A DNA stretch of 64,000 bases, taken from the NCBI RefSeq assembly GCF_006345805.1, contig NC_043007.1:30070001-30134000 (forward strand), given 5' to 3'. Under the pieces are notes generated by a model. It did not search any database. It was not told the origin of the DNA and saw only the letters and a program-made list of their open reading frames with translations. This document shows positions 36,811 through 57,831 of the stretch, one piece after another; positions within the stretch are counted from its first letter, which is position 1, and each line of letters starts with the position of its first letter. The stretch comes from Octopus sinensis (Eukaryota). The position numbers and the translations under genes are program-made.

Positions 36811-36856
36811 ATGAACGAGCAAAGATGGACCTACAAATTCATTTTCCGAGTATTTG
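36811..36856 (+). CDS. Tandem-PEBP gene, candidate coding exon 1 (MNEQRWTYKFIFRVF, signal peptide n/h region)
   Basis: acacaATG context (A at -3) and donor TTG|GTAAGA in phase 1. Joining to exon 2 gives MNEQRWTYKFIFRVFVFIIIMTATTTG, a plausible signal peptide. Confidence 0.55.
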
Positions 36857-37544
36857 GTAAGATAGATTTTAACTTTCAGATTTTTCTACATACAAGTTAT
36901 TATATGCAGTCTGTCATGATAGCCGGTGTTCATCTCCATACCTGTTGGTGTGTTTGTTTTTTTAATCCACCTGTCGGCATGGACATAACTACACGTTTTC
37001 GCCTCCCCATTCACTCACTCCTCCTTTCTCTCTCTCTATATATATATATTAGTGCGAATTTATATTTGTATAAATATCTAATATAGGTTAATACTTAACA
37101 CTCATACACATATACATACATGCATATGTACGTACGTATGTATGTATGTATGTATGTATGTATGTATGTATGTATGTATGTATGTATGTATGTATGCAGG
37201 TGGGTGGTGTATGTGTGTGTCAGTGTATATATATATCTATATACACACACAATGTAGTCATTTGCTGTCATCTTTGATGATATAAAAATATTTTTTTATG
37301 CAAGCATACACGTATGCGGGCATGTCTATGTTTGTGGTGACACACACACACACAAGCAGCATGCACACACACACAAGCAGCATGCACACACACACAAGCA
37401 GCATGCACACACACACGTGTGTATAAATATTTTCTATCCATTTTACTCTTCTTTCTGCATATGACTTGTGTCCCGTTTACAGAAGAGTAGATGCAACAAT
37501 TGTTGTACCGATGACATCTATTGAGGCAGAAACACGTACTCATC

Positions 37545-37745
37545 AAGGCGGCGAGCTGGCAGAAACGTTAGCACGCCGGGCGAAAGGCTTAGCGGTATTT
37601 CGTCTGCGGTTACGTTCTGAGTTCAAATTCCGCCGAGGTCGACTTTGCCTTTCATCCTTTCGGGGTCGATAAAATAAGTACCAGTGAAGCACTGGCGTCG
37701 ATCTAGTCGACTTACTCCTCCCCCGAACTTGCTGGCCTTGTGCCA
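37545..37745 (+). mobile_element. Family A SINE
   Basis: Well-preserved consensus copy. Confidence 0.8.
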
Positions 37746-38489
37746 AAATTCGAAATCATTATTATCATTCAATCAATGCATAAAATACGCTTCCTCAGGT
37801 GATTGTTCAAATAATTCCATTGAATTCTAGCACCATTTCATTCTGCCTGAGTGAAACAACGAAAGGCTCTAAGGAAGGACATATTTAAACAAACACCTGA
37901 GGTGGTGCGTTTTATACGTTGAGTGAAAGATAATGATTACACAACGTCTCACCAATAAACTGAAGGTGTAATAAAATGCCACAAAAATTGTAATAATTTA
38001 AAATAAAGAATGTCATTTATTCTATTTTCTGTCAGTGTCTATCCGTATTTATATAAGCTCTACGGAGGCTACGCAATTCTTGATGTTTATCCAGGAGCAA
38101 CAATAACTCTAGATGAACTTTACACTACAAACTTTTTTACTAAAATCTTATTTAACGAATACATACGTGCATACGTATGTAAATGCATGCATATACATAA
38201 GTATATACATATTATACATGTATGTATATATATATGTTTGTATATATGTATGTGTGTATATATATATATAGTAGGTGGAACAATTGCTGTATCGATGACA
38301 TTTATTGAGGCAGAAACACGTACTCATAACCATCGTCTTGTCTTCAGATAATCAGGCTGTCTTTTCCTTAATGGCGTATCAATTTTGGAGAATACTTGAT
38401 TTTAAAAAATATCATCTCTCCTCATCTGGAGTTCGTACTAATTGCCTCTAAGTGATTGGTCTGCTCAATCTAGAAGCGGAGGTGATATA

Positions 38490-38700
38490 TATTTCTTTAT
38501 TGCCCACACGGGGCTAAACACAGAGGGGACAAACAAAGGGATTAAGTCGATTACATTGACCTCAATGCGTAACTGGTATTTATTTAATCGACCCCGAAAG
38601 AATGAAAGGCAAAGTCGACCTCGGCTGAATATTTACTCAGAACAAAACAGCAGACGAAATACCGGTGAGCATTTTGCCCGCCGTACTAACAATTCTGCCA
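38490..38700 (-). mobile_element. Family A SINE
   Basis: Consensus blocks. Confidence 0.7.
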
Positions 38701-39065
38701 GGAGTAGCTATGTGGTAGGTAGCTTGCTTGCCAACCACACGGTTCTGGGTTCAGTTCTACCGCATGGCACCTTGATCAAGTGTTTTCTATTGTAGCCTCG
38801 GGCCGACCAAGGCCTTGTGAGTGGATTTGGTAGACGGAAGCTGAAGGAGGCCCGTCGTATGTGTGTGTGTGTATGACCACGTGTGTATCGTTGGCGATTT
38901 TCTTTCTCCGTCTTTCCTTCCTTTCTATGTTTTTGACGAAGAGCTCCGCTCGAAACGTTAAATCCCCCATCTTTCTTTCCTTTACTGTGCGTCCAATAAC
39001 ACTATATTTGATCCACGTCCTCGCGTTGTAGTGTTTTCTCTTTGTTCATGTTTGGATTAACTTAC

Positions 39066-39126
<61 letters not shown>

Positions 39127-39259
39127 ATATAATATATATATATATATATTATATATGTATATACATACATATATGTATGTGTGCATATATATATATGTAT
39201 ACACACACACATTCTTGTATAAGCATATATGTATGCGTCTATATATCTACATGTATAAG

Positions 39260-39301
<42 letters not shown>

Positions 39302-39481
39302 CGGGAAGGTTATATATATATATATTATATATATATACATACATATATATATATATATATACATACATACATAAATATATATATATATAGATACATACAT
39401 ATATATTATATATATATTATATATATATACATACATATATATATACATACATACATTATATATATATATACATACATATAT

Positions 39482-39525
<44 letters not shown>

Positions 39526-39829
39526 CTATACTTATATATCTTTGCAAGATGTATATGTATATATATCCATATGTCTATATATGTATATGTATACCTACAC
39601 ATGCACACACGCACACACTCACACACACACACAAATACATGTACATATATGCATTTATGTATGTGTGTGCGAAGCAGGAGAAAAAGAGAATGAGAAAGCG
39701 TGAGTGGGAAGGGGGGAAGGAGGAAAGACAGAAAGAAAGAAAGAACCATTTGATGTGATTTAGTCGATATAAAGGGACTTACAACATTGTTTACACTGGG
39801 AAGAGGTACCGGAGTGTGATTGGACACAC

Positions 39830-39865
<36 letters not shown>

Positions 39866-40002
39866 ACACGTATGTGTGTATATGTATGTATATATGTGTC
39901 TATTTATACATCAATATTTATTTATGTATGTATGTATAAAAATATATATATATATGTATGTATATGTGGTGTATATACATACACACACACACAACACACA
40001 CA

Positions 40003-40057
<55 letters not shown>

Positions 40058-40372
40058 ATATATATATACATACGTATGTAATATATATAATATTATATAT
40101 ATATATATATATACATACGTATGTATATATATATGGCTGGTGTTACGTTTGTCAAGTGTCTTAATATGAAGCGGTCCATGGAAAGTGAATCAATGACATT
40201 GTGGAATCGTGGAAGAGTCAGGGCTTTGGATACACGCCTATGCACACACTTTCATACACATACACACGCAACCATTTCTACCTACCTACCTACCTACCTA
40301 CCTACTACCTACCTACCTATATAGCTACATACATATATATATATATATGTGTGCATGTGTGCGCGCGCGCAT

Positions 40373-40403
<31 letters not shown>

Positions 40404-40482
40404 AATGGCGGTGCCCCAGCATGGCCACAGCTCATAAGCTGAAACTGGAAAATCAAAATCAAAAATCAAAAATCTGTATATA

Positions 40483-40524
<42 letters not shown>

Positions 40525-40619
40525 TTGGATGTATATATATATATATATATGTAGGTCCCGGGTTGATCCGGGGTTAACCACAGTAAGTAAGGTACTCAAT
40601 ACATAGCAGAGTAAAATTA

Positions 40620-40759
40620 ATTTATTATATAGAAGGAGCTTCTACAGGACTAGTACTGTTCATTCAAGAGAAATCTTCAGGAAGCTTCAGGTGCTTCCTG
40701 AAGTTTTCTCTTGAATGAAACAGTACTAGTCCTGTAGAAGCTCCTTCTATATAATAAAT
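40620..40759. repeat. Palindrome (about 66-bp arms, 7-nt spacer) made of two inverted hammerhead-like units
   Basis: Left arm 40620-40685 is the reverse complement of 40693-40759, with one substitution and one indel. Confidence 0.85.
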
Positions 40760-41630
40760 ATATATATATATATATATATTTGTATATATGATATTGTATA
40801 CACAATATAATATATATTATATACAAAATACGAAAGTATGTATAGGTATGTATACATATGTATGTATCTATGCAAATGTATGTATGATGGTAATATTTGA
40901 TTGGGAAATCGAATCTGACGATGGCTTAACTGGCCGAAGCTTCGAAGTCGCTGCCAACAATATTCTTGTTTAACAATAAACTATACATACATACATACAT
41001 ACATACATGCATACATACATACATACACATACATACATACATACATACACATACATACATACATACATACATACATACGTACGTGCATACGTAAATATAT
41101 ACATACATATATACATACACACACAAATATATACATACACATACATATATATATGTATATATATATTATTTTTTTTATATATTTATGTATATATATATAT
41201 ATATATATGCACATATATACATACATCCATACAGATATACTTACACGCACACCTGCATACTCATACAAAAGCGCAACATATACACCCAGATGTGTGTAGA
41301 AGCTCCCATCTGCAATTTCAACCCAGAACCGCCCCCAGTCATTCAGTAACTAATCGTTATGACACCAGGGGGCGGCAGGAAGTTTGGACAAAGGGTAAAT
41401 ATTAAAGATATTTGCGGGGAAACTTCCAAAGAAGACTGCAGGGACTAAAGTGGATTAGGTGGAATTAGAACTCTAATCCTCTCGACTGAAAACCTTCCGT
41501 TGTTTAGGTGTGTTTGTTAACTCGATAGTGTTCGGCAATCAAAAGGCGATGAAGGAAACAGTGTTGAAATGTGTTTCAGGTGTGTTTACCGAAAGATAAG
41601 GCCATGACAGACGAGGGCGGGCGGGGTATT

Positions 41631-41695
<65 letters not shown>

Positions 41696-42696
41696 GTTGG
41701 GGCGGGATTATACCAATATTTATCGGTCAAGGGGGAGATTTAAGAGAGGGTCGATGAAAGTGTCACAGGACCCTGCAGGATTATAGAAGCGTGGACTGTT
41801 GATCCGGGTTCATTTCGGGCCAAGGTCGACTTGGGAACATTCCTTACGGAATCGACCGAGTCTTGCTGCGTGTGTTGGTGTTGCTGCTGTTGCTTGGCCC
41901 CCGGCTCAATATTGACCGTGCAAATCTATGACCAAAGACTTTCCAGATATGACCACCCCATCTATTTAGCTATTAGGGATGTTCCTCTGATTTGGTGATG
42001 CGATTTGAGGTAAACTGAAAATTTGAGGTAAACTGAAAATCTCTTTCGCCCCAGGCCAACTCAAATTGAGCAGATTCATGATCAGACAATCCAACAATAG
42101 CCATCCCTTTTGTTGGGCAAGTGGTGAGGTCAATGCTGGATTAACCATTAAGCAAAATAAGCACGTGTTTAGGGCATCAAGGGAAGGAGGGGGCACCACA
42201 GAAATGGTGAATGGTTTACGGTACAAAAGAAATCACTTAAAACTTGCTAAAATAATATTCGGGATGCCTTTATCTCTACTAGGTATAGATGTAGATGTGT
42301 TTTCTAAGATTAATTTTGAGGATCTGATCAAACCCGCACTATTTATGAGATGACACAATATATACGTGTATGTAATTTTTACAAGAGGAGCGACAGTGAC
42401 TTTGAAGCCTGCTCGCCATTGTCTTATTGTCTGGCGAAGGGTAGCAGTCCGAAACCTCCAAGTCAATGTCACTCCTTTTCTTGAAAAAGTATAATAAATA
42501 TGCACTCGACGAAAAGGATTGACTAATTGTTCAGTTTAATGTTAAATTGCTTTATCACTGGACGTAAAAGCAACCATTACGATATATATTATATAGAGTA
42601 ATTATTAAATAAGTATATTCTCAAACGCAGAATAATGCTAATAAAATAGCATGAACAGGATAAACTATCCATAATTTGCAGCAAAAATCTGTCGCC

Positions 42697-42768
42697 GGCC
42701 AGCTATGAAACTCGAACTCACATCCCTGTGATTACGCGTCAATTGCTTTACCATTAAGCTAAACTGCC
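42697..42768 (-). pseudogene. tRNA-like relic (Thr, CGT-type anticodon), probably a SINE head or tRNA pseudogene
   Basis: GGCAGTTTAGCTTAATGGTAAAGC...GTGAGTTCGAGTTTCAT.AGCTGGCC. A and B boxes are present; the acceptor stem is one base short and the anticodon stem and U33 are defective. Confidence 0.5.
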
Positions 42769-42882
42769 CAGCGAGAAACTCTTCTGCAATTTTAGGATAT
42801 ATAAATCTAGCTTTATAAGATGCTGTATCATTCAATACATCTCAATGCTTCTAAAGCAAACTTTGTTGACTTTCAACGTAGG

Positions 42883-42958
<76 letters not shown>

Positions 42959-42960
42959 CA

Positions 42961-42991
<31 letters not shown>

Positions 42992-43062
42992 GTGTGTGTG
43001 TGTGTCTTTGTGTATACATATCGTATTCGAAGTGCTTGATGTATTTTTGTTTTCTATTTCAG

Positions 43063-43476
43063 TGTTTATAATCATTATGACTGCCACAACAACAGGAATA
43101 GCAAAATCACCATCATCATCATCATCAACATCAACAGCATCAAGAACATTAGCAAACACAACGTGTGGTGGCGATCGTGCCCGCACCATACTCAAATGTC
43201 TCAGTCTCATTCGGACAATCTTTAGCAGCGATGACCTCTTCTGGTTCGGTAAGATCTATTCCTCGTTGTGTCCGTCTTACAAGACCAAAGTGGACATTTC
43301 CTGTTATAAAGACCCAGTGACCACCACCACCGTTGATGCTATCTCCACCTCCACCACCACCATCAGGAAAAAGATCAACAATGACGACAGCCTCTTAACT
43401 TTATTGTTTCGGCCGGGCGAGTTCAACGTGAAACGATTTGACCGCTATTTGAACGTCTCCTACCGATCTCCACAAG
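43063..43476 (+). CDS. Tandem-PEBP gene exon 2 (signal peptide end, 4-Cys region, Thr-rich linker, start of PEBP domain 1)
   Basis: Acceptor ttttgttttctatttcAG, donor CAAG|GTAATG, phase 1 to 1. The frame is open (FIIIMTA...FDRYLNVSYRSPQ) and continuous with exon 3. Confidence 0.75.
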
Positions 43477-44735
43477 GTAATGCCGCTTCCCCCCACTTCT
43501 GCACCTCATTCCTGTCGCCCTTAGCCTGTTGGCAGGATAACCCTAGCCTTACTTTAACCAAAATCGCATTTCAAACACCGGTCCTTTTCTTCTGGTGATC
43601 TCTACACTAGAATATTGTTCCTTCGTCTCAGGGATGCTGCTGCTGTGTCCAGTTATTGTAGACCGCATCTAAAGATGAAGTCTCTCAATTGCGTGATCCT
43701 TTTCCCGAGGTGGGGGAGAAGTTTCGGATAATTCCCACGCCTCAATTTTGTGTCCTCATAACTGTCATATTTTGATGATATAAATTACAATTATGTTGGG
43801 AGAAAAAGAGAGAAAAAACCCTTTGAGGTCTTTTCCTCACTTTCTCGACTGGAATTTGTTAAATGAATCTTTTTTAATTAAATGAACATTTCCAAAGATA
43901 TCGGTTTAATTTGAAGACAACAAATCATCAGTGATGTGTGGCCCTATCTACATATATTCTTGTAACTGTATTGTATTGCTTCCACATGGGTTAATATCGG
44001 TCTGTAAAGCTTCTGGCATTATGCAAATAAGTTTGCATGATAATTCTTGTTTCAAGCATTGTTTTCTAAGTAGTTCTCTACTATTTCTATGAGAAGCAAA
44101 GATAGAGATAAGCGATCCCTGATGAGTTTTAAGAAATACGAAACTGTTCCATTTGACCCTTAATTCGAGTTACCGAATTCCCTGTTATTTACCCAAGAGT
44201 CCTATTTTCACAGCGTGACTTAAAATACACTCTTTAAACAAGAATTTCACTCTTCTTTTTATTTGCTTAGGGTTTCTTGGTTTATTTAGAAAGAGGAACT
44301 GGGCTCGTAGCCTTCGGAGGTTCCCTCCTTGGCCGAGAATAAATATTTATTCCTTAATATTATTTGTACACTATTGTGTCTCGGCACGGTCATTGTGTCA
44401 ATAATAAATACACGCACTAGTTCTATTTCATTTCTTTATTATTATTATATTATTATTTGCCAACTGATTAGCCGTTTAACCAATTAACTAACCGAGACCT
44501 GGTGTAGGGAAGGATGTCATTAATGAAGTAGCGAATGGCAACGAAAGGACTTTAAGAAAATGTAGCCGACTGACCAAAAAATTATTCAAACAATCAATTA
44601 GTTAAATGGTTACCCAACTGATAAATATAACCAGTGCGTGTGTTTATCATTGACCTAATGACCCTCCCGAAATGCATCGGAATATGTTTCAACACACGAG
44701 TTCACCAAATGCAAAACTGTTGTGTTATTTTCCAG

Positions 44736-44971
44736 GTCAGTACAAAGCCTGTGCTAATACATACAAGATGGACGCGTATCCCTATTTAGAGGTGAATCCT
44801 TCAGCAGCCACGTGGCTGACCCCTTGGCAGATGAGAAAGATGCCAGATGTTCACTGGGTTCAATTCAATTCAGACCCACAACACTACACCCTCATGTTTT
44901 ACGACAGCAGCAACAGCAACGTGAAAGGCCTCTACACCAACATCCTGGAGAACAAACTGACCATCTCCACG
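44736..44971 (+). CDS. Tandem-PEBP gene exon 3 (PEBP-like domain 1, N-half)
   Basis: Acceptor gttattttccAG, donor ACG|GTAGGC, phase 1 to 0. WLTPWQMRKMPDVHW...HYTLMFYD...YTNI matches LTP.Q....P.V.W...YTL.M.D...NI. Confidence 0.85.
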
Positions 44972-45010: not shown

Positions 45011-45148
45011 TCTTCTTCTTCTTCTTCTTCTTCTTCTTCTTCTTCTTCTTCTTCTTCTTCTTCTTCTTCTTCTTCTTCTTCTTCTTCTTCTTCTTCTTCT
45101 TCTTCTTCTTCTTCTTCTTCTTCTTCTTCTTCTTCTTCTTCTTCTTCT

Positions 45149-45170
<22 letters not shown>
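45011..45170. repeat. Uninterrupted (TTC)n, about 53 units
   Basis: Read directly from the sequence; starts 40 nt after the exon 3 donor. Confidence 0.95.
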
Positions 45171-45209
<39 letters not shown>

Positions 45210-45425: not shown

Positions 45426-46881
45426 AAAGAATATATATATACGTATGTATGCACACACACACTCACACACACACAATCACACACACACATACATACCTAC
45501 AACAGTATCAGTTGCAATGGTTCACACCTAACAACAGACCCTGCTTAGTAAATAGCTACGGGCAAACACCATTACATAAGGTTTTTACACCCTTATTCCA
45601 CCCGATTTTAAGGATTAGGCTTAATCTAAACATTACTTCCTCCAACCCTCACCCCTTTCCTCATCCCACTCCCCATCTTTCACTCTACTGCCCCCCCCCA
45701 CCGTATTGCCACCGTATTTGTTTAATTAACTGGTTTCTATGCATTTTGCAGAATCACAAAACCATCTCAGATGGCGACGGGGGGGGGGGGGTGAGTGAGT
45801 GTCCATTCTTCGTTTAAAGCCACAAAACTTATTTTACTCAGCGGTTCCTTCTGCAGGAACATCAACAGCCAAGTATGGCTGAATCTACTCATTGTAGTAA
45901 ATATCAAACCTCTAATTAAAAATACATCTGTGGTGGGGAAAGAATGACATTGATTGGGCAATGACTGAAATGATTTTAATCCTTTTTCTGTAAGTACAGG
46001 GAGACAACTACGGACAAGTTTCGGTGTTATTATACCTCTTCATTTCTTTGTATTTGACGAAATAACGATGAGGAAACTTCTGAATATATGAATATAGTTA
46101 TAAGATGTGTAGGTGTGGAAATCCGAATAATAGCGTATCTAGTCACCCTTAATTCGTTTTGGCTGAGTATTTGTCAAAATTCATTTGCAAAAATCTTATT
46201 TTTCATTAAACCACCCTTACACACTATTTTTATATTTTTGTTTATCCCTGATCTACTCTGATTGAAGAAACCTAGGCTCAGAGAGTTCCCAGCCATTTCT
46301 AGCATCATTTTCTCACTATTTCTTTTTAAATTTGAAGATGTATTTAATCTATTTAGAACTACTTTATCCAGTATGTCCTTCATTTTTTAAAGACAACTAG
46401 ATGTAATAGTATATATATTTGGTTAGTCTTTCTAGCAGGTTCAGCGATCATGAAGAGCTTTATTCGTTAGACAAACAGACCAACAAAATATGTGTCGTTT
46501 TCTTTTTTAAAATAAAAGTAACCTGACACACCCAAGAAACCATTGGACGCTTTCCTCAGTAGGAATAAAAACTGTGTTCAATAAATGTTTTAAAAAGCTA
46601 AACAAAACTTCTACTCCACGTCAGAAAACTATTTTATTTCAGACAAACATTATTTACCAATTTTCTATGAAAAACTGAAGTCCACTCATTTACCGGATAC
46701 AAGGATTCTAAGTAACACCAGACAGTCGTTAGCCCCAGGACACGCACAAAGTTCTTTTCGTCCTCCATTTCTTAATTTTGATGTTTTTCAAAAAGCTTCC
46801 TGTTTACACTTTGAAGGTTTCTTGTAATTCTTCAAACAAACAGATTTGCCAATGAGGATTTGATTCTTACATAGCCTTCGG

Positions 46882-48095: not shown

Positions 48096-48940
48096 GTTAG
48101 TTAGTTAGTTAGTTAGTTAATTTGGCTCAAAAGCAAATAGCAAGGCCATGTAGGGGAACATGGAGTTAAGTACAGGGTGGTGTTCATGTAAAGAGTTCAG
48201 GCCACTTGAGGTCCAGGGAGGCTTTGAACAAAGCGGTCGTCGGCATCTTCACCATCTCGTCTGGCAGCTTGTTCCACGGATCCGCAACCCGGACGGAGAA
48301 AGCTCCTCTCCTTCGATTGAGATGAAATCGTCTCAGGTAGAGCTTTCGGAATGACCCCGCAGCCGACGCTCTGGAGCAGGAGTGAAGAACAGCTCTTTCG
48401 AGAGGTTACACTTTCCGCTTATGATGTTGTGGGCGAGAATGAGATCACCACGGCGGCGGCGTCTTCCAAGAGAATAAAGGTCGAGCGTCCTCACCCTTTC
48501 TTCGTAGGACAAATTTTGAGACCATGAACAAACATGCGGGTAGCCAGCTTCTGGACTCTTTCGAGATGCTGTATGTCTTGAGGGATAAGGAGAAGAGGCT
48601 TGAATCCCATACTCCAATATGGGTCTCACCAGCGTGACATAGAGTGGTAGGAATATGGCTGCTGTGAGCATTCCGAATGACCGTCGAATCAAGAACAGAA
48701 TTCCGCGTGCTTTGTTGCAGCATGGACGCACTGGGCCGAAGGGCGAAAAGGAGGAGGAATCACCAAGATCCCAGGTCCTTTACCTGATCGGTCCTCTCCA
48801 GCAGCAGACGACCCGGCTCGAAATCAAGTTGAGTTGCAGGAAGTAGAGCCGACAGGCAGATGACAGCACTTTGACACGTTCAGACACAGGTCCAATCGTT
48901 AGACACTTCCAAATTTGGTGGAGGCATCGACAAAGATCGA
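48096..48940 (-). mobile_element. CR1-like LINE 3' fragment (post-RT region) with (TAAC)n tail
   Basis: AANKARGILFLIRRSF...LYVTLVRPILEYG...LSYEERVRTLDLYSL.RRR.RGDLI..H.I...RLRGH. Confidence 0.9.
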
Positions 48941-49934: not shown

Positions 49935-49980
<46 letters not shown>

Positions 49981-50154
49981 ACACTACACCATGCACACAT
50001 ACAGCGTACAGCCACACAAAAAAATATGTACGTGATTATAAATTTTAGTGCAACTCCCACGTTAAAAACTCGCGCAAACGCATTCAGACGTGAATCGCAT
50101 TTCCTTTTGCTCCCATAACAAGTATGATATTGTCAGCATTATGTCTTTCCACAG

Positions 50155-50326
50155 GAAGTGATACGTTATGAAGGCCCCATGAACTTCCGGAACTTCTCGT
50201 CTCCATTCCTTATTTTGTTATTTCTACAAGAATACACAGTAGACATATCTACGGAATGGCGAAGGAGATTCCTGAAGCCAGTCTACCGATTTCTTGGCAA
50301 TTTCACCCGTGAATATAATCTGGATG
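50155..50326 (+). CDS. Tandem-PEBP gene exon 4 (PEBP-like domain 1, C-half)
   Basis: Acceptor gtctttccacAG, donor GATG|GTAAGG, phase 0 to 1. EVIRYEGP...FLILLFLQ...FTREYNLD matches Y.GP.PP...Y.FLL..Q...F...Y.L. Confidence 0.85.
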
Positions 50327-51514
50327 GTAAGGTATACTCCGAGTTGTACTTGGAAGAATCTTTTTTATGCTACGTTTGTTTCTTTTTCCGCTTCTCCCTG
50401 TACTCTCCAATTTCCGCTCTATCTGCTTCTTTCTGTCATTGTGTGTGTGTGTGTTGGTGCACACACACACACACACATACACACACGATTTAAGATATGA
50501 GATACAGAAAATGGAATTCACTGGTCTCTTATTCAGAACCACTACGATCGTTTCGTCTTAGTATGCCCCTGTACCTTACAGGTGAGATGCTGTGCAATCA
50601 ATTGTCATGCATTATATGTGCAGATGCATATCCTCCGGTAACTTTTCAATAAGTATCCCGTTGTTTCTTGCTGTTTCGCTTATTTCTATAACAAAACATA
50701 TTGGTTAGTGTAACAGCCCAGCTGTCTTCACATTGAACTCAAATAGGAGTCTTTCATTCTATATGTGTAATTTAATAAATACAGTTCTGGGCGATCTACT
50801 TCAAGTTTCATGATAGAAAAGTACAGTATTTGTCCACGCTTTTGTAAAGTGTATCATTTGCGAACCTGTAAATTCTTTAAACTTCTGAAGCTTATGAATC
50901 TCAATAATTGCTTGATCGCACCCCTTACACCCCACATGAACATGGCCGAATATTCTACTTTTCAAATTCGAAATTTGAAGTAGTTCACCCATAACTTCTC
51001 TAATAATTAAATGATCTATTTAGTCTTGCTGAAATAAGTCCTGTTTTCTGATCTTATCCACAAAGTAACTTGCAGACTCGGTCAAAAAGAGATGTTGTAC
51101 TAAATTATATTGCTTTGTGTAGCGTGGTTATGATGGCCAATGCAGGCCATCAGTGGTTATCTTGGACTCTAATGTTTAATTTACCACCTATCAACTGGTT
51201 GAGTGGCCAACGGTCCAAGTTCTGTTCAGTGCTGTTTCCCACGGCCAAAGCTCTTAAATTAATTAACGACCACAATTTACTTGGCACCAGAGTGACATTG
51301 TAAAGGTGACGGATGTTTCGTTAGTTTGTAAACAAATGTTCAAGTCTTCTCACAAACTGCGAACCTGGTGGAAGTGTTATCAATGATACTTCTATTCCAA
51401 TTCTGCTCAAACTCGCTCAAACACCCATGGAATGATTAAATTTATTCTTATACTGCCTTGATTATTTATTTTCATTCGTTCATTCACTCTTTCTTTCTCT
51501 CTCGTTATCTCAAG

Positions 51515-51619
51515 GCCCCGTCGCTGTCAACTGGGCCCTAGTGTCAACAGACCTTTATGCAACAGAACAAAACCGCATTTCCAATATCGTAGACAACTGT
51601 CCACACTATATCGCTAGAG
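51515..51619 (+). CDS. Tandem-PEBP gene exon 5 ([16 protein letters not shown]...NCPHYIAR)
   Basis: Long pyrimidine tract then tctcaAG, donor GAG|GTAAGT, phase 1 to 1. PVA.NW matches the PEBP terminal strand PVA.N(F/W). Missed by the ORF track. Confidence 0.85.
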
Positions 51620-51631
51620 GTAAGTAAAATC

Positions 51632-51696
<65 letters not shown>

Positions 51697-51937
51697 CATA
51701 CATACATACATACATACATACATACATACATACATGCATACATACATATATATATATGTCAGCAATCTCGAGTATAACCAGCCGAAATTGCAAAGATAAT
51801 CTGGAACTCGACTGAAGAAGAAACTCCGAATGACCCGTCCTTGTTTTCTTCGTATCGTCTATCTGGATGTTTTGTTGTCCCTTTTTTGTATCACCTAACT
51901 GTCTGAATGTTTTGCGTTCTTGTCCCATTTTGTATTT

Positions 51938-51968
<31 letters not shown>

Positions 51969-52288
51969 ATATATATATATATATTATATATATATAGTGA
52001 GTGAGAAAGAGAGAGAGAAAGGTGTATGTGTGAAATTTACTGCCTCCATCCGACATTTCACCTTCCCATTAAAGGATCAGCTCGTGGTGTTAGACTTACT
52101 TTTACTCCAACCATTTAGCATTTGTAGTTTGTATACGAAGTACACACAGCATTATACAAACTGCAGAAGCTCTAATGACTTCTAAATATTTATTTTTGTC
52201 ACATTTTCTTCCACCTGTCTATAAAAGTGTTTGAACTAAAGTTTTTTTTCTTACATTTCTTATTCCATAATTTCCCACGTGATGGCAG

Positions 52289-52409
52289 CACTTGCAAAAC
52301 ACGAACGCACATTTATCCCACCTAATTTACACCTGTACGTCGGTCTTTACGTCTCCTTCACCTCTGCAAGTATTACCTATCAATCTTGCTGCAATGAGTA
52401 TAAATCCAA
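52289..52409 (+). CDS. Tandem-PEBP gene exon 6 (ALAKHERTFIPPNLHLYVGLYVSF...SCCNEYKS)
   Basis: Acceptor ...gatggcAG, donor CAA|GTATGT, phase 1 to 2. It exactly bridges the phases of exons 5 and 7 and parallels the exon 2/3 junction peptide. Confidence 0.75.
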
Positions 52410-52419
52410 GTATGTACAT

Positions 52420-52648
52420 ATTTATTATTATTTTTGGCTTTTTGCTTTGGTTTTATTCCTGGTAGGATTTATATGGGTAGCGGGTTACTACCTGTAACCT
52501 TAGGTGCACACAAGTTTTCGGCAGCATTTCAAGTGCTTGGGACCAACCTGATAATCCTTACTGTCCCAAAGAAACAATCTTTCTGTAGGAGTCCTACCGG
52601 GCATTCTGTTTCAATCGCCTTCAGTCATTTGTCTTGGCTCACTGTTCA
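52420..52648 (-). mobile_element. 3' end of a second R4/Dong-like family
   Basis: The minus strand reads LKAIETECPVGLLQKDCFFGTVRIIRLV*, the REL-LINE terminal LQK..L.GT..I.R motif; abuts (ATT)n. Confidence 0.65.
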
Positions 52649-52659
52649 TTATTATTATT

Positions 52660-54660
52660 ATTATTCAGTAGTTTTATTTTTATTTTTATAGCGTGCTTTC
52701 ACTTCACTACCGAGCGCAGCTCTGTGTGCCTTGGGTATGTGCTGTGATTTGTTGTGATGCTCTGATGGTTATTGTATGGAAAGTGTTCTGCGTAGGATGT
52801 GTGCAGTGCCTAGTAGTGCAATTTTCTGTATGTTATATGTGTTTGTAAGTCCTGGTGTTTTTGTTATGTATTTGTCTGAATATTTTTTTATCATGCCTAA
52901 TGCACCTACTATGATAGGAATTGTTTCTGTTTTCAGATTCCACATTCTAGTTACCTCTATTTCCAGGTCTTTGTATTTTGAGAGTTTCTCCATTTCTTTT
53001 AGAGACACGTTGTCATCTGCCGTACTGATACATCAATTAGAAAGCATTTTTTTTCTTCATGGTCTCTGACAACTATATCTGGTCTGTTGGCCTTAATTTC
53101 TCTATCTGTGTGTATCGGCATATCCCAGAGTACGGTTGCTTTCTCGTTTTCTGTGACCTTTTCTGGTGTGTGCCTATACCATCTTTTTTCTGTTGTTATT
53201 CCATAATGTTGGCATAGCTTCCAATGTATGTAAGTTCCAACTCTGTCATGTCTGTGAATATATTCCTTCTTAGCCAGGACTGGGCAGCTAGAGATAATAT
53301 GATTTATTGTTTCTTGTCCATCTCCACATATTCTGCAGTTACTTGTAATATTTCTTTTCATTACATGTTTTTGGTAATTTCTGGTGGGGAGGCTTTGGTC
53401 TTGTGCTGCAATTAAAAATCCCTCTGTTTCTGCTTTGAGTCCTGAGCTTCTCAACCATTGCTGGGATTTTTCTTGTCTATTTCTTTTGCGTTTAGTTTAG
53501 TCCAGTATTACCATGAAGGGGCTTTTCTTGCCATCGTTTTATCATGGTTCGTTGCTGTTCTATTTTAGTTTGGATTTCATTTTTTTTATAGCTTTTGTTG
53601 TTTCTTCATCTTCTTCTTCTTCTCTTCTTCTTCATGTTTATTAGGTGGTATGATTTCTTGTTTGTATTTGTCAGCTTCCTTAAATACTGAGAACAGTTTT
53701 TTGTTTTGCTCGTGTTTTGCCGCTATCTGGATCAGTTTTCCTCCTTCTGAAGTAGATATTTTTGCAGTCCTATGTGGTTATTTTATAGTAGTTTTCCAGC
53801 TGTATAAGGCCTCTACCACCTTCTATACGTTGTTATATAGTCTTTCTATGTCAGATTTTGGGTGATGCATCCTAGATCCTGTCATTATTTTTCTTGTTTT
53901 CCTGTCTATTTTGGTCAGTTCATTTCGTGTCCAGTTAAGGATATTGTAGCTGTAACTTATAACTGGGACAGCTAAAGTGGTTGATACCTATTATCTTGTT
54001 TTTAGCATTGAGCTCTGTGTTTAGTATTGATCTAACTCGTCTATAATATTCTTTTTTTTTTCTCTTTCATTTGTGTGTGTTGTGTCTTATCTAGTTCATG
54101 GATTCCTAAGTATTTGTAAGTTTGGCTTTGGTCTAATTCTTTTATTTCATTGCTTCATCTAGTGTGATGTTGTTACTCTTAACTAGTTTTCCTCTTTTCA
54201 TGGTTACTTTGGCGCATTTTTCTAATCCAAATTTCATATCTATTTCTTTGGTAAATCCATGAACTGTCTTTAATAGTGTTTCCAGCTGTTTGTCATTTGC
54301 AGCGTATAGTTTTAGGTCATCCATATGTAAAAGGTGGCTGATCGTTTTGCCGTAACATTTATATCCGCATCCAGTTCTATTTAGCATATCAGATAGAGGT
54401 GACAGTGCCAAGCAGAAAAGGAGTGGAGAGAGCGTATCTCCCTGGAATATTCCTCTTCTAATGGGGATGTCTTTGGTTTTCATGAGTCCCTCTTTTGTTT
54501 GGAGGTGTAGGACTGTTTGCCATTTATTCATAGAGTGCTCTATGAATTTTATGATTGTTGGTGCTACTTTGTTAATGGCTAGTGTTTCGAGGATCCATGT
54601 GTGGGGGATGCTATCAAACGCCTTTTTGTAGTCAATCCAGGCCATACTGAGGCCTTTCTT
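52660..54660 (-). mobile_element. R4/Dong-type LINE, 5'-truncated 2-kb copy (RT, CCHC zinc knuckle, REL endonuclease)
   Basis: WIDYKKAFDSIPH...RGIFQGDTLSPLLF...LHMDDLKL; CRICGDGQETINHIISSC; RHDRV; KANRPDIVV; flanked by (TAA)n on both sides. Confidence 0.92.
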
Positions 54661-54661
54661 C

Positions 54662-54706
<45 letters not shown>

Positions 54707-55246
54707 GTTGTTGTTGTTATTATTATTCACCCCTCGCCTCCGCCATCCTCCCTCGATTGGGCAGGCAAGGCAGTTTTCCTTTGCCTGGTGGCTGTGGCGA
54801 AAGAAGTTGTTTGGTGGACAAGGCTGAAAGGAATGAGGACAGATATATTCTTCACATAGATTCCTTCAAGTTTCACTTGAAAAGGAAATTGAGAGCGGAG
54901 AGAGAAGTGCTGCCCTCGAATGAGTTTATTGAGAGATGAGTGAAAGTTGCGAAAATGGCAAGGGTGGATGGTACCTCTCTAAGTGAAGACCTGTGAGTCG
55001 GAGAGAAGGAATTAGAGAGTGCATTTGCTCCTAGGGTTTCAGGGAAATCTCAGACAGTGGGGTTCCACGATTATTCCTAGAGGCGTTCCTGTATCAGGAG
55101 GGCCACATTTCTATCATCCTCCCGCCTTTATTTTTTTTACCTTTGTATGTCCCTTCTTTTCCGGTGTTTACCGGGTATATATACCTTCTTTTTTTTATCA
55201 TTTCCTTATTTTATGTAACCCCCACCACACTTTATGATGTTTTCAG

Positions 55247-55377
55247 TGCTACAGTCGTTTACTTGAATCCTCTGGCAAATGGAACGGCAAAGGCGGTTGA
55301 CACCCGGTCTGGTGTCATGCCAAACGTTACAATTAGCTTTGTGCCTTTTGACCAACACCAAATGGAAGAATTTCGCC
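55247..55377 (+). CDS. Tandem-PEBP gene exon 7 (ATVVYLNPLANGTAKAVDTRSGVMPNVTISF...EEFR)
   Basis: Acceptor gatgttttcAG, donor GCC|GTAAGT, phase 2 to 1. Confidence 0.8.
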
Positions 55378-56094
55378 GTAAGTAGTTGTCCTTCATAATT
55401 ACACATATAGTAGGATCTCATAATACGCACAACAAATTGTTAAACTTCGAGTAACTGAGAATTAATAGATAAAATCTACCCCCAAGAAGTGTTTAAGATC
55501 TAAAAGGTAACAAACCAAGGGATATAACTCGAATAAGATCAGTTGCTTGAAATTTTTGGACAATATAGATAATCCATATTAGAGTGGAACTGATCTTTAA
55601 ATCTACCTGATGAGAACAAGCGGCATTTTTTGATATTATTATACATTGTGAGCAAAAGATAATCCAGTCAATTGGCAAAGCTACGAGGGATCGAGATACG
55701 TACATGATTTCCGTTAATTTCTCTGCTGTACCCGGGGTATTGTTACACGTAGAATCATTTTACCGGGATATATTTGCTTCACTAGTTTTAACTGTTTATA
55801 GTTCTGAAGTATATGGGTTGATTTTAAGCTCCATTAATATATTTGTTCATTTTATAATTTAAGGGCAGTTTCAGTTGTTGCCAGGTGCCAAGCACATTGG
55901 CCATTTAATTAATAATCGATTATTTAGTCTCGTGGAAGTTAGAAATTTACTGCAAAGCCTGGGACATCAAAAGGATTTGCATAGAACCATCTGTAAATTT
56001 TTCTAGTTAGTCTTTTGGTTTCGGTCGAATTTTTTCCCATCAAAGAACCAAAATTTGCCATGTTCGTGAATGTTTTTAAGTTTGTTTAAGTAAG

Positions 56095-56520
56095 CATTTG
56101 GTAAGTATCAAACGGCTTTTTTGTCTTTCCAGACAATAACTGGCATCTGCTCATTATACTAGGCTTGCATCGAATGCCTTCGTACACTATATTGTCCACT
56201 CCAACACCAAATACTTTTTCAGCGAAGACCCTCATTGATTTTCCGGGATCATCATCGATAATGTTTTGAGTCTTTTCGATGATTTGCAGAGTCATTATAA
56301 TATCCGAACGTCAAGAAAGTCTTTTCTGTCTTTGATATATTTCCCGCTAGAGGTCACCAGTTCCATCCGGGCTTTCTGTACAAAAAATCTTGTAACATTT
56401 AGAAAGTTGGTCATTTCTAAATCGCTGGGTTCCGTACATAGGGCAGCAATAAGGACTTCATCGCTTTTGTGTTCTTCTCTTTGCATTTTATCTGTCATGG
56501 CAGATCTGAGAACAAATAAA
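56095..56520 (-). mobile_element. Tc1/mariner-superfamily transposase N-terminal remnant
   Basis: SDLEMTNFLNVTRFFVQKARMEL...QNIIDDDPGKSMR...VYEGIRCK...CQLLSGKTK. It resembles the N-terminus of the transposase type seen at 29714-29996. Confidence 0.6.
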
Positions 56521-56678
56521 TCGAAAAAAGTATTTTAACTGGTTGGAAGAGAGTAATAAACCGATAATTAAGTCTCATCAAAATACCCCTTTGCGCTCTA
56601 TGTGTGTGTGTGTTTTTCTTCTTTGCCTTCCTTTCAGTAATTAGTCATGTACTAAAGGATTATTTCTTCATTTTCCAG

Positions 56679-56952
56679 ATTCTCTCTTCACGCTTGTTAT
56701 GGTTGACCCAGACATCCCAGAGGTCTACCACTCGTTGGGTAACTCTACCTACCCACTTATCCATTGGATGACCATTAATATCATTGGCAAAGAGTTGTCG
56801 ACTGGTGAGGAGGTACACGCTTATATAGGTCCCCTACCACCTGACGAAAACCCTCATTTCTACTATTTCGTTCTATTGAAACAACCACGGAGACTGAAAA
56901 AAGAAGACCTGGAAGGGTTTTATTCAGACTGTGGGGAGGCGCTTAAAGGAAG
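56679..56952 (+). CDS. Tandem-PEBP gene exon 8 (core of PEBP domain 2)
   Basis: Acceptor ttcattttccAG, donor GAAG|GTAAGG, phase 1 to 2. FTLVMVDPD...LIHWMTINI...YIGPLPP...PHFYYFVLLKQ are PEBP signature motifs. Confidence 0.93.
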
Positions 56953-57566
56953 GTAAGGCCAAAGTCATTTATAAAGTGGAAGCGTGTCTGGGTTTTACAA
57001 AATGGTAAGACTTAGTATCTTGTGATGTTAGGTTCTTTTACGATCTGATTAAAAAATCTTAGGGAGTCAATAAAGATCTTTCTTTTCGAATGACTGGTTT
57101 TGTACCAATATTAGAAATCATTCTCAATAACAAAAAAGTAACAGTTAAAGACAATAAATTAGATGGGGAAACTAATCAGCTAATTAGCTGAAGTGATGTA
57201 AAAAGATATTCCGATCGACATATTTGGAGCTTAAAATGGCGCATGATCCTGTGTTCGATCTGAAAGTTTTGTTGTTGGTGTGATGGTACGTTCAGACACA
57301 AAGGCACACAAGCCTCTGGTGCACCTCTTCTCTGATAAGAGGCAGGAGTCCGAAACGTCGTCATTTACCTTTCCTCACATTAACTGTATCTGTTAAAACT
57401 GCCACACTTCATCTTAGATTAAAATATCTGCAGTTAATCCGGTATTGTTTTGTTTTTCAAATGTTAATCTTCCCCGAAGGTATACACCATTAGTTTCACA
57501 TAGCAACACATTTCCTCTTCTGAGTTTTCCGTTTACCATTGAACTGCTTTCATCTTCTGTCTTTAG

Positions 57567-57831
57567 GTGTCTGTTTCGTATGAGGCAGTTCGTGCAAGCC
57601 AAAGATTTGGTGTTTGCTGGTGCCACGTGGATGGCCATTGAAAACGACAAGTATGTGAGAGGGGTGTATCTGAGGCAAGGAAGCCCACCCGACGAAGTAT
57701 GTAAACAGTCCAAATATTATCAACCAGGATGCCTCGATTCAAGTGAGGCGGTGAGACCCACGTCAGGCCATGGAATCATTTTTGCTTTCTACTATTTCCT
57801 TCTGTTATTGGTAACGGTTGTAACTTGCTAA
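57567..57831 (+). CDS. Tandem-PEBP gene last coding exon 9 (domain 2 end plus GPI-signal-like hydrophobic tail)
   Basis: Acceptor tcttctgtctttAG, phase 2. CLFRMRQFVQAKDLVFAGATWM...GCLDSSEA...IIFAFYYFLLLLVTVVTC*. Confidence 0.88.

What the first reader, a model, noticed from the sequence alone, without database searches (positions are those of the whole stretch)
36811..57831. Secreted, probably GPI-anchored, tandem-PEBP protein assembled from 9 exons
Seen in sequence: exons 36811-36856, 43063-43476, 44736-44971, 50155-50326, 51515-51619, 52289-52409, 55247-55377, 56679-56952 and 57567-57831 are all GT-AG and phase-compatible. They total 1764 nt (587 aa plus stop). The product has a signal peptide, a 4-Cys N-terminal segment, a Thr-rich linker, two PEBP-fold repeats and 8 N-glycosylation sequons (NTT, NVS, NFS, NFT, NAT, NGT, NVT, NST). 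It ends with small residues (DSS), a spacer and a terminal hydrophobic stretch with no cytosolic tail. Established: well-studied PEBP/RKIP/FT proteins are single-domain and mostly cytosolic; PEBP4 is secreted, and multi-PEBP invertebrate proteins exist but are largely uncharacterised. Inference: this is a cell-surface, disulfide-stabilised two-domain PEBP, a candidate ligand-capture or protease-modulating surface protein.
Basis: partly seen in the sequence, partly recalled or inferred. Interest (0 to 1): 0.75.

Follow-up and report, generated by a model that had tools for sequence, protein, structure and literature searches.

The report
Octopus surface protein with two PEBP domains
The nine exons are a real octopus gene, already in RefSeq as an "uncharacterized protein C56G2.4-like", that encodes a secreted, probably GPI-anchored glycoprotein with two PEBP-type domains from a family no one has studied.

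Summary
The nine exons are all GT-AG, sum to 1764 nt and give a 587-aa product. That product is 100% identical over its full length to RefSeq XP_036363185.1 (Octopus sinensis, "uncharacterized protein C56G2.4-like").

Pfam detects only the C-terminal PEBP domain. Three further results show the N-terminal half is a diverged PEBP duplicate:
- Profile against profile, N half versus C half: 99.8% probability, E 2e-29.
- N-domain profile against solved PEBPs: Tm16 E 5e-18, PEBP1 about 1e-13.
- A confident AlphaFold model: pLDDT 86, pTM 0.77.

The C domain keeps the PEBP anion-pocket residues. The N domain keeps only the first Asp.

The family occurs in molluscs, an annelid, tardigrades and nematodes. 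Members share a signal peptide, 12 near-invariant cysteines and a short C-terminal hydrophobic tail preceded by small residues, which is a GPI-type signal.

Junctions 2 to 8 are supported by collinear cDNA-derived orthologues. Junction 1, which carries the signal-peptide exon, rests on the RefSeq model and an intact copy in O. vulgaris only.

Function is untested and no literature on the family was found. The gene is already annotated but uncharacterised, so interest is modest.

The parts
36811..36856 (+). Exon 1 (46 nt): start codon and residues 1-15, the first half of the signal peptide (MNEQRWTYKFIFRVF).
   Evidence: ATG with A at -3 and a GTAAGA donor; intact in O. vulgaris (MNEQRWTYKFILRVF, donor kept); the syntenic interval in O. 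bimaculoides is an N-gap, so deeper conservation could not be tested. This is the least certain exon.
43063..43476 (+). Exon 2 (414 nt): the rest of the signal peptide (to about A29), a Ser/Thr-rich stretch, the 4-Cys helical module with the FWFG motif (residues 44-100), the Thr-rich linker (101-116) and the first strands of the N-terminal PEBP-like domain.
   Evidence: splice sites; the acceptor and the first codons are identical in O. bimaculoides. W76, F77, G78, C85 and C96 are invariant or near-invariant; C50 and C61 are present in 34 of 39; helices at 55-69 with pLDDT 81-95; the linker has pLDDT about 50.
44736..44971 (+). Exon 3 (236 nt): N-terminal PEBP-like domain, residues 154-232. 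It includes the invariant C159 and D210, the latter being the equivalent of the first Asp of DPDxP.
50155..50326 (+). Exon 4 (172 nt): N-terminal PEBP-like domain, residues 233-289 (Y237-x-G-P, then FLILLFLQ257).
51515..51619 (+). Exon 5 (105 nt): end of the N-terminal domain, residues 290-324 (GPVAVNW, invariant D302 and C318).
   Evidence: The Argonauta gene model carries a 60-aa insertion exactly at this exon 5/6 junction, as expected of a retained intron.
52289..52409 (+). Exon 6 (121 nt): inter-domain helix and the first strands of the C-terminal PEBP domain, residues 325-364 (invariant C358 and C359).
55247..55377 (+). Exon 7 (131 nt): C-terminal PEBP domain, residues 365-408.
56679..56952 (+). 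Exon 8 (274 nt): core of the C-terminal PEBP domain, residues 409-499. It carries D418-P-D-I-P422, H437, G459-P-L-P-P463, H468 and Y470.
   Evidence: PF01161 at residues 408-496, E 6e-12; residue-by-residue alignment to human PEBP1 and Tm16.
57567..57831 (+). Exon 9 (265 nt): end of the C-terminal PEBP domain (Y534 is equivalent to PEBP1 Y181), the conserved C545...C555 pair, the candidate omega site D559-S-S-E-A, an 8-10 residue spacer, the hydrophobic tail 570-587 and the TAA stop.

Best explanation
This is the Octopus sinensis orthologue of the uncharacterised 'C56G2.4-like' family. It is a single 9-exon gene encoding a 587-aa extracellular glycoprotein. The shown or well-supported parts are, in order: an N-terminal signal peptide; a small helical 4-Cys module (C..C..FWFG..C..C); an octopus-specific Thr-rich linker; a diverged PEBP-fold domain whose ligand-pocket residues are lost; a second PEBP domain that keeps the canonical anion-pocket residues; a Cys-x9-Cys motif; and a C-terminal signal of the GPI-attachment type. 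The two PEBP domains arose by an ancient internal duplication. The inferred mechanism is as follows. The protein enters the secretory pathway, forms up to six disulfides and is N-glycosylated. Its C-terminal propeptide is exchanged for a GPI anchor at D559 or S561, so the protein sits on the outer leaflet of the plasma membrane. There the C-terminal PEBP pocket binds a small anionic or phospho-group-bearing ligand, or docks a partner protein as soluble PEBPs do with proteases and kinases. The degenerate N-terminal domain and the Cys module act as a rigid stalk or second interaction surface. Rough confidences: identity and architecture about 0.9; GPI rather than another membrane or secreted topology about 0.65; pocket-mediated ligand or partner binding about 0.35. 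The confidence figure below applies to the identity, the architecture and extracellular membrane-tethered localisation.
For: Gene model: GT-AG at all junctions and an open frame; identity to XP_036363185.1; exons 2-9 conserved in O. bimaculoides and all nine conserved in O. vulgaris; collinearity with cDNA-derived orthologues across junctions 2-8. Domains: Pfam PBP hit on the C domain. N half versus C half by hhalign gave E 3e-12 with 6 sequences and E 2e-29, 99.8%, with 39 sequences. The N-domain profile hits solved PEBPs: Tm16 5e-18, bovine PEBP 5.4e-14 and human PEBP1 1.5e-13, mL38 1e-9. The AF2 model has pLDDT 86.2 and pTM 0.77, with the same order of strands and helices in both halves. 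All 49 Foldseek PDB matches at E<=0.001 are PEBP-family entries. Pocket: D418/P419/D420/P422, H437, G459/P462/P463, H468, Y470 and Y534 align with PEBP1 D70/P71/D72/P74, H86, G108/P111/P112, H118, Y120 and Y181. The N domain keeps only D210, Y237-x-G-P and Q257. Extracellular: 12 cysteines are invariant or near-invariant in 39 sequences from four phyla; there are 8 sequons here and a family median of 6; leaders and C-terminal tails are family-wide, and a cDNA-derived member has a textbook leader, MGVAVGVFFLSIVGLTLG.
Against: No RNA-seq could be mapped, so junction 1 and the 5' end rest on the RefSeq model and on one very close relative. The O. bimaculoides and O. vulgaris annotations use different first exons. 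No dedicated signal-peptide or GPI predictor was available, so a short C-terminal transmembrane anchor cannot be excluded. PEBP1 R119 is replaced by F469, W84 by L435 and G110 by L461. In gastropod and nematode subfamilies even the C-domain DPD/His motifs decay, and most nematode members lack any Pfam hit. Pocket chemistry may therefore not be the conserved function of the family. There is no experimental or literature information on any member.
Confidence: 0.8

Rival explanations
1. The architecture is the same, but the C-terminal hydrophobic stretch is a true transmembrane anchor (a type I protein with essentially no cytosolic tail) rather than a GPI-attachment signal.
For: The hydrophobic tail is 18-19 residues in octopus, which is borderline long enough to span a membrane. 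A few family members have 4-11 residues, some of them basic, after the hydrophobic run. No GPI predictor was run.
Against: Across the family the hydrophobic run is usually only 10-17 residues and ends 0-4 residues from the C-terminus. It is preceded by small-residue triplets (SGS, DSS, DSA, SGA) at the spacing typical of omega sites in 35 of 38 scored members. No conserved cytosolic motif exists.
Confidence: 0.15
2. The protein is an extracellular structural or adhesive component, for example of an apical matrix, cuticle or shell-forming epithelium, in which both PEBP folds serve only as disulfide-stabilised scaffolds and no small ligand is bound.
For: The N domain has lost the pocket in all members, and the C-domain motifs decay in nematodes and several gastropods. 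What is invariant family-wide is the cysteine framework and fold-core residues, not the pocket. The octopus protein also carries a Thr-rich, mucin-like linker.
Against: In cephalopods, bivalves and the annelid, the full set of pocket residues in the C domain is retained over large evolutionary distances. This argues for selection on the pocket in these lineages.
Confidence: 0.3
3. Exon 1 is mis-predicted, the true protein starts elsewhere (for example at M21 in exon 2) and it is not secreted.
For: Exon 1 is only 46 nt and lies 6.2 kb upstream. It has no detectable counterpart in the available O. bimaculoides sequence. Annotators of O. vulgaris and O. bimaculoides chose other first exons.
Against: The O. 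bimaculoides interval is an assembly gap, which explains those models. The exon 2 acceptor and the hydrophobic codons directly after it are conserved. Exon 1 is intact in O. vulgaris. The family has leaders, 12 conserved cysteines and many sequons, which is incompatible with a cytosolic protein.
Confidence: 0.05
4. Exons 2-5 and 6-9 belong to two adjacent single-PEBP genes that were wrongly fused.
For: Only one Pfam hit is found, and the two halves each fold as a domain.
Against: cDNA-like contigs of about 2-2.5 kb from other species encode both halves in one ORF. More than 50 representatives at 50% identity match across residues ~50-560. No stop, start or leader occurs at the domain boundary. 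AF2 predicts a packed two-domain body with pTM 0.77.
Confidence: 0.01

Closest known systems
C. elegans C56G2.4 and the 'C56G2.4-like' proteins of nematodes, tardigrades, molluscs and annelids (database family, uncharacterised)
   Same: Full-length collinear homology from about residue 50 to 560. The same order of signal peptide, 4-Cys FWFG module, two PEBP-like domains, C-x(9)-C motif and C-terminal hydrophobic tail. The same 12 cysteines. RefSeq names the octopus protein after this family.
   Different: Octopus adds Ser/Thr-rich low-complexity inserts (residues 31-42 and 101-116). Cephalopod, bivalve and annelid members keep the canonical pocket motifs in the C domain, whereas most nematode members have lost them and no longer hit Pfam PF01161. 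The C. elegans protein itself was not retrieved here; only nematode orthologues carrying its name were.
PEBP1/RKIP (human, bovine, rat; PDB 1beh, 1bd9, 1a44, 2iqy)
   Same: The PEBP fold in both halves. The C domain keeps the equivalents of D70, P71, D72, P74, H86, G108, P111, P112, H118, Y120 and Y181.
   Different: PEBP1 is a single-domain, about 187-aa, cytosolic protein without disulfides, a leader or an anchor. In the octopus protein R119 becomes F, W84 becomes L and G110 becomes L. A 3-residue insert bearing an N-glycosylation sequon (N430-S-T) sits next to the pocket. RKIP-type regulation of the Raf kinase is implausible for an extracellular protein (inference).
Secreted nematode PEBPs such as Trichuris muris Tm16 (PDB 5tvd)
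   Same: Tm16 is the best sequence match among solved structures for both the C domain (E 4.5e-9) and the N-domain profile (E 5e-18). These are extracellular invertebrate PEBPs.
   Different: They are single-domain soluble proteins without the Cys framework, the duplication or the C-terminal tail.
Yeast Tfs1p, carboxypeptidase Y inhibitor (PDB 1wpx), and the protease-inhibitor activity reported for PEBP1
   Same: PEBP fold match (rank 25). It is a precedent for a PEBP acting by docking onto a protease, which is one candidate mode of action for an extracellular PEBP (established knowledge plus inference).
   Different: Weak sequence similarity (E 0.019-0.04). Tfs1p is cytosolic and single-domain. 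No protease partner is known or predictable here.
Mitoribosomal protein mL38 (MRPL38)
   Same: Top Foldseek hits. It is a PEBP domain embedded in a larger protein with extensions and used as a structural module with a non-canonical role.
   Different: It is a mitochondrial ribosomal protein with one PEBP domain and no secretory features.

Membership tests
PEBP superfamily (Pfam PF01161 PBP) | Sequence match to the family model above the curated threshold | tested here: met
   the C domain (residues 408-496) scores 46.4 bits against a cut-off of 24, E 6e-12. The N domain alone gives no hit, but its family profile hits solved PEBPs at E 5e-18 to 1e-13.
PEBP superfamily (Pfam PF01161 PBP) | PEBP fold (large central beta-sheet with the C-terminal alpha-beta element) in the predicted structure | tested here: met
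   AF2 model with pLDDT 86.2; all 49 PDB matches at E<=0.001 are PEBP-family chains, with target-normalised TM up to 0.79. The hit table does not say which half of the model is aligned. The N-half assignment rests and on the parallel order of secondary structure elements.
PEBP superfamily (Pfam PF01161 PBP) | Ligand-pocket motifs DPDxP and the His of GxHR, plus the His after the DPDxP loop | tested here: met
   C domain: D418-P-D-I-P422, H437 and H468 are all present. The Arg of GxHR is replaced by F469. N domain: only D210 is retained and the motifs are otherwise absent, so this feature is met for one of the two domains.
C56G2.4-like tandem-PEBP family | Full-length collinear homology to members from other phyla | tested here: met
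   30 representatives at E<1e-30, most matching about residues 50-560; members in bivalves, gastropods, an annelid, tardigrades and nematodes, several named C56G2.4 or C56G2.4-like by their sources.
C56G2.4-like tandem-PEBP family | Conserved 12-cysteine framework and the FWFG motif | tested here: met
   C85, C96, C159, C318, C358, C359 and C545 are invariant. C50, C61, C493, C501 and C555 are present in 29-38 of 39. W76, F77 and G78 are at least 90% conserved.
C56G2.4-like tandem-PEBP family | Direct comparison with the C. elegans namesake protein | not tested
   The C. elegans sequence was not among the proteins returned. Membership is inferred through nematode orthologues (Aphelenchus 'Protein C56G2.4', Caenorhabditis auriculariae, Haemonchus 'CBG19696').
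GPI-anchored proteins | Cleavable N-terminal signal peptide | tested here: inconclusive
   Heuristic only. Charged n-region (R5, K9, R13), hydrophobic core 14-28 (KD9 3.2) and G-I-A29|K cleavage context. Leaders are present in 38 of 55 family sequences. SignalP was not available, and exon 1 is not verified by transcripts.
GPI-anchored proteins | C-terminal signal: small omega, omega+2 residues, a polar spacer of about 5-10 residues, a hydrophobic tail of 10-20 residues and no cytosolic tail | tested here: met
   candidate omega sites DSS or SEA with spacers of 9 and 7 residues, a 19-residue hydrophobic tail and 0 residues after it. The same pattern is seen in 35 of 38 scored family members. 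This is a rule-based script of my own, not NetGPI or PredGPI.
GPI-anchored proteins | Biochemical evidence of the anchor (PI-PLC release, anchor mass spectrometry) | not testable with these tools
   Requires experiments.

The most novel reading that the evidence does not exclude
The C56G2.4-like proteins are a protostome-wide class of GPI-anchored 'PEBP plus pseudo-PEBP' surface receptors or ligand traps. In this reading, the intact C-terminal pocket captures an extracellular phospho- or lipid-modified signal, while the degenerate N-terminal domain presents it to, or sequesters it from, a signalling partner. The oyster variant that carries a Frizzled-type cysteine-rich domain in front of the same body hints at a link to lipid-modified morphogens. 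This would be the first extracellular signalling role for the PEBP fold.
Probability: 0.12. Interest if true: 0.6.

Novelty: already known. Interest (0 to 1): 0.3.

Why it matters
As a gene call it adds nothing new, because the identical protein is already in RefSeq. Its value is descriptive. Automatic annotation records one PEBP domain and the label "uncharacterized". The analysis here shows that the family has a fixed architecture: leader, 4-Cys module, pocket-less PEBP, pocket-bearing PEBP and a GPI-type tail. This architecture is conserved from tardigrades and nematodes to cephalopods, with twelve conserved cysteines. PEBPs are studied almost only as cytosolic regulators (RKIP, FT/TFL1). 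A conserved, membrane-tethered extracellular tandem version with a genetically tractable C. elegans member is a reasonable but not urgent target for functional work.

Tried and rejected
1. AF2 with only the six cephalopod-level sequences gave an unusable model (pLDDT 42). It was rerun with 39 family members.
2. A second word-indexed homologue search with the cephalopod alignment found nothing new.
3. I tried to test conservation of exon 1 in O. bimaculoides. There was no blastn or Smith-Waterman match because the syntenic interval is a 775-N assembly gap, so the test is uninformative.
4. The Sepia cDNA-like contig L001 does not reach the leader. Its 5' end has an in-frame stop and no in-frame ATG upstream of the conserved region, which I read as unspliced intron.
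5. My 'canonical PEBP' control set for hhalign was seeded by a sequence that is probably a fragment of this same family. That N-versus-canonical result is therefore not used as independent evidence, and the comparison with PDB sequences replaces it.
7. An Rfam E-value scan of 30-64 kb returned only sub-threshold, microsatellite-driven miRNA-like hits and one tRNA-like hit. It found no SECIS element for the neighbouring selenoprotein exon. ARAGORN found no tRNA.
8. Four literature searches for the family, its accession numbers or GPI-anchored or tandem PEBPs found nothing relevant.
9. I compared intron positions between the two PEBP halves by eye. They do not coincide, so the gene structure gives no trace of a recent exon-block duplication.

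Full report
**1. The observation**

- Every internal boundary is AG|exon|GT.
- Exon 1 begins with ATG in an A(-3) context.
- The exons sum to 1764 nt and read as one open frame of 587 codons ending in TAA at 57829-57831.

The product has the eight N-x-S/T sequons listed, at N47, N146, N245, N281, N365, N376, N391 and N430. It has cysteines at 50, 61, 85, 96, 159, 318, 358, 359, 493, 501, 545, 555 and 587. It has exactly two hydrophobic segments, residues 10-28 and the extreme C-terminus 566-587. tblastn of the product back on the window finds only these exons and no second copy.

**2. Identity**

A search of 5.8 billion proteins returned a protein 100% identical over 100% of the length: XP_036363185.1, "uncharacterized protein C56G2.4-like [Octopus sinensis]", carried on a 77.5-Mb chromosome record. 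Orthologues are present in O. bimaculoides (90% identity), O. vulgaris, Argonauta hians and Sepia (Acanthosepion) pharaonis.

**3. Support for the splice junctions**

- Two relatives are encoded on short contigs that must be cDNA-derived, since the octopus gene spans 21 kb. These are L001 (2458 nt, Sepia-like, 49% identity) and L002 (1998 nt, 30% identity). In the 39-sequence alignment the octopus protein runs through junctions 2 to 8 without any indel relative to them. A mis-placed splice site would show as an indel.
- The Argonauta gene model has a 60-residue insertion exactly at the exon 5/6 junction. This is what a retained intron looks like and marks the same intron position.
- Exons 2-9 with their flanks align to O. 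bimaculoides at 85-94%, and all nine align to O. vulgaris at 93-99%.

Junction 1 is weaker.
- The exon 2 acceptor and its first codons are identical in O. bimaculoides.
- The interval syntenic to exon 1 in that assembly is a run of 775 N. This also explains why the O. bimaculoides models carry odd, leaderless 5' ends.
- In O. vulgaris exon 1 is intact (MNEQRWTYKFILRVF, GT donor kept), but that species is too close for this to weigh much.
- The Sepia contig's 5' end has an in-frame stop and no in-frame ATG upstream of the conserved region, which I read as unspliced intron, so it does not reach the leader.

**4. Two PEBP domains**

Pfam finds one PBP domain (residues 408-496, 46.4 bits against a cut-off of 24) and nothing else, even at E<=10. 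phmmer against PDB sequences sees only the C-terminal half, with Tm16 of Trichuris muris the best match.

The N-terminal half is nevertheless homologous.
- A profile of residues 118-330 aligned to a profile of residues 331-548 gives 97.6% probability, E 3e-12, with six sequences.
- With 39 sequences the result is 99.8%, E 2e-29 over 173 columns.
- Independently of the protein's own C domain, a 28-sequence profile of the N domain hits solved PEBPs directly: Tm16 at E 5e-18, bovine PEBP 5.4e-14, human PEBP1 1.5e-13, Drosophila CG7054 2.6e-13, mL38 about 1e-9 and FT/Hd3a about 1e-6.
- Two of the 28 N domains even reach Pfam PF01161 on their own.

An AlphaFold2 model built on the 39-sequence alignment is confident (mean pLDDT 86.2, pTM 0.77). 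It shows the same succession of strands and helices in residues 146-327 and 343-544. All 49 PDB matches at Foldseek E<=0.001 are PEBP-family chains. The six-sequence model had been useless (pLDDT 42).

**5. What is conserved in each domain**

Aligned to human PEBP1, the C domain keeps these equivalents:

| Octopus C domain | Human PEBP1 |
|---|---|
| D418-P-D-I-P422 | D70-P-D-A-P74 |
| H437 | H86 |
| G459, P462, P463 | G108, P111, P112 |
| H468 | H118 |
| Y470 | Y120 |
| Y534 | Y181 |

The differences are R119 to F469, W84 to L435, G110 to L461, and a three-residue insert carrying the N430-S-T sequon beside the pocket.

The N domain keeps an invariant Asp (D210, the first Asp of DPDxP), Y237-x-G-P and Q257. 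It has no second Asp or Pro, has Lys where most relatives have His, and has nothing at the H118 and Y120 positions. So one domain is pocket-competent and the other is a pseudo-PEBP. In gastropod and nematode branches the C-domain motifs also erode, and most nematode members have no precomputed Pfam hit at all.

**6. The family**

The exhaustive HMMER search found 398 representatives at E<=0.001 and 30 at E<=1e-30. About 50 representatives of 480-630 aa match from about residue 50 to 560. Source names place them in:
- bivalves (Mercenaria, Dreissena, Potamilus, Saccostrea);
- gastropods (Lottia, Littorina, Haliotis, Lymnaea);
- an annelid (Owenia);
- tardigrades (Ramazzottius, Hypsibius, Paramacrobiotus);
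- nematodes from Trichuris to Steinernema, Pristionchus, Haemonchus and Caenorhabditis.

All are labelled hypothetical or uncharacterised. Twelve cysteines are invariant or nearly so, and the FWFG motif of the N-terminal module is more than 90% conserved. By internal symmetry, C159...C318 in the N domain corresponds to C358/359...C545 in the C domain (inference).

Intron positions do not coincide between the two halves (by eye). Together with the phyletic spread, this dates the duplication to before the protostome radiation.

**7. Topology**

There is no SignalP or NetGPI here, so I used rules.
- The octopus N-terminus has a charged n-region, a hydrophobic core and a G-I-A|K cleavage context.
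- Of 55 family sequences, 38 have an N-terminal leader and 42 have a C-terminal hydrophobic tail. Those without are mostly visibly truncated models.
- A cDNA-derived member starts MGVAVGVFFLSIVGLTLG.
- In a second set of 48, 38 have an uncharged hydrophobic run of 10-22 residues ending within 18 residues of the C-terminus (31 of them within 4). Thirty-five of these have a small-residue triplet 3-11 residues upstream.
- In octopus the pattern is D559-S-S-E-A, a spacer of 7-9 residues, a 19-residue tail and no residues after it.

Short tails, the absence of a cytosolic segment and small omega-type residues make up the classical GPI-attachment signal (established knowledge). A short transmembrane anchor remains the main rival. 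The conserved cysteines and frequent sequons (family median 6) agree with an extracellular protein.

**8. Mechanism**

Shown: the gene model, the two-domain PEBP architecture, the conserved cysteine framework, and retention of the pocket residues in the C domain.

Inferred: secretion, N-glycosylation, disulfide formation, GPI attachment near D559-S561 and display on the outer leaflet.

Further inferred, with roughly one-in-three confidence: the C-terminal pocket binds an anionic or phospho-bearing ligand, or docks a partner such as a protease, as known PEBPs do (PEBP1 with phospho-ligands, PDB 2qyq and 2iqx; Tfs1p with carboxypeptidase Y, PDB 1wpx; all among the fold matches). The N-terminal pseudo-PEBP and the 4-Cys module would serve as stalk or second surface. 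A purely structural role is the main functional rival, because pocket residues are not conserved family-wide.

**9. Comparison and novelty**

The protein is a member of the PEBP superfamily by score, fold and motifs, at least in the C domain. It is also a member of the database family named after C. elegans C56G2.4. It differs from every studied PEBP (PEBP1/RKIP, FT/TFL1, Tfs1p, Tm16, mL38) in being tandem, disulfide-rich, glycosylated and membrane-tethered outside the cell.

Four full-text searches found no paper on the family. Because the identical protein is already deposited and named, I rate it "already known" as a sequence feature. What is not in the annotation is the second PEBP domain and the GPI-type architecture. 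Interest is modest at 0.3.

**10. Other things seen**

These are listed in the noticed-in-passing field: a selenoprotein thioredoxin-reductase terminal exon downstream on the minus strand, retroelement fragments in introns, a Frizzled-domain fusion in oysters, and four-domain models in two molluscs.

Noticed in passing
window 62360-62490 (-): This is the terminal coding exon of a neighbouring gene. After an acceptor (ttttgcag|GG) it reads ...[40 protein letters not shown], a Cys-Sec-Gly-stop ending typical of selenoprotein thioredoxin reductase. The orthologous loci in O. bimaculoides and O. vulgaris have a minus-strand Pyr_redox_2/Pyr_redox_dim gene at the same relative place. No SECIS element was detected by Rfam at E<=0.1.
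   Followed up: partly
window 52999-53454 (-), 54142-54645 (-), 48333-48731 (-), 63339-63893 (-): These ORFs look like reverse-transcriptase/LINE-type fragments by eye. They lie in introns 3 and 6 of the PEBP gene and downstream of it, and the copies at 48333 and 63339 share near-identical peptide stretches. They were not run against Pfam.
   Followed up: no
window 42697-42768 (-), intron 1: A tRNA-like sequence scores 32.7 bits against Rfam RF00005 (gathering score 29), but ARAGORN does not call it. It is probably a tRNA-derived repeat.
   Followed up: partly
window-wide, e.g. 45011-45182, 39066-39593, 24260-24603: The window is very dense in microsatellites ((TCT)57, (AT)270, (AAT)116, ACAT/GTAT arrays). 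These generate long spurious ORFs and dozens of sub-threshold miRNA-like Rfam hits. A 184-bp tandem repeat of 2.5 copies lies at 32475-32936.
   Followed up: no
window 45449-45817 (+), intron 3: The peptide NHKTISDGDGGGG in the O. vulgaris gene model (P0002) comes from an ORF in the region orthologous to this intron. That model also skips half of exon 2 and uses a different last exon. It appears to be a mis-annotation rather than an isoform.
   Followed up: partly
L003 42710-43484 and about 20 other N-runs (O. bimaculoides GCA_001194135.2): The O. bimaculoides locus is riddled with assembly gaps, and one gap removes the interval orthologous to exon 1. The RefSeq models of that species therefore start with unrelated, leaderless exons up to 37 kb upstream.
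   Followed up: yes
P0027 / P0171 (Saccostrea echinata, S. cucullata): These oyster family members carry a Frizzled-type cysteine-rich domain (Pfam Fz, E 1.4e-20, residues 32-133) in front of the tandem-PEBP body, and P0027 lacks the C-terminal tail (the P0171 sequence was not examined). The fusion is predicted in two species, but transcript support was not checked.
   Followed up: partly
P0012 (Mercenaria, 950 aa), P0162 (Littorina, 1004 aa): The Mercenaria model (P0012) contains two complete copies of the whole architecture, giving four PEBP-like domains, and the Littorina model (P0162) has the length expected of the same, although its sequence was not read. They could be tandem gene duplicates fused by the annotator or real four-domain proteins.
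   Followed up: no
window 4001-12000: There is a strong positive GC skew (0.18-0.26) and raised GC (up to 0.435) over 8 kb far upstream of the gene. It coincides with purine/pyrimidine-biased low-complexity repeats (AGA, CTT arrays).
   Followed up: no
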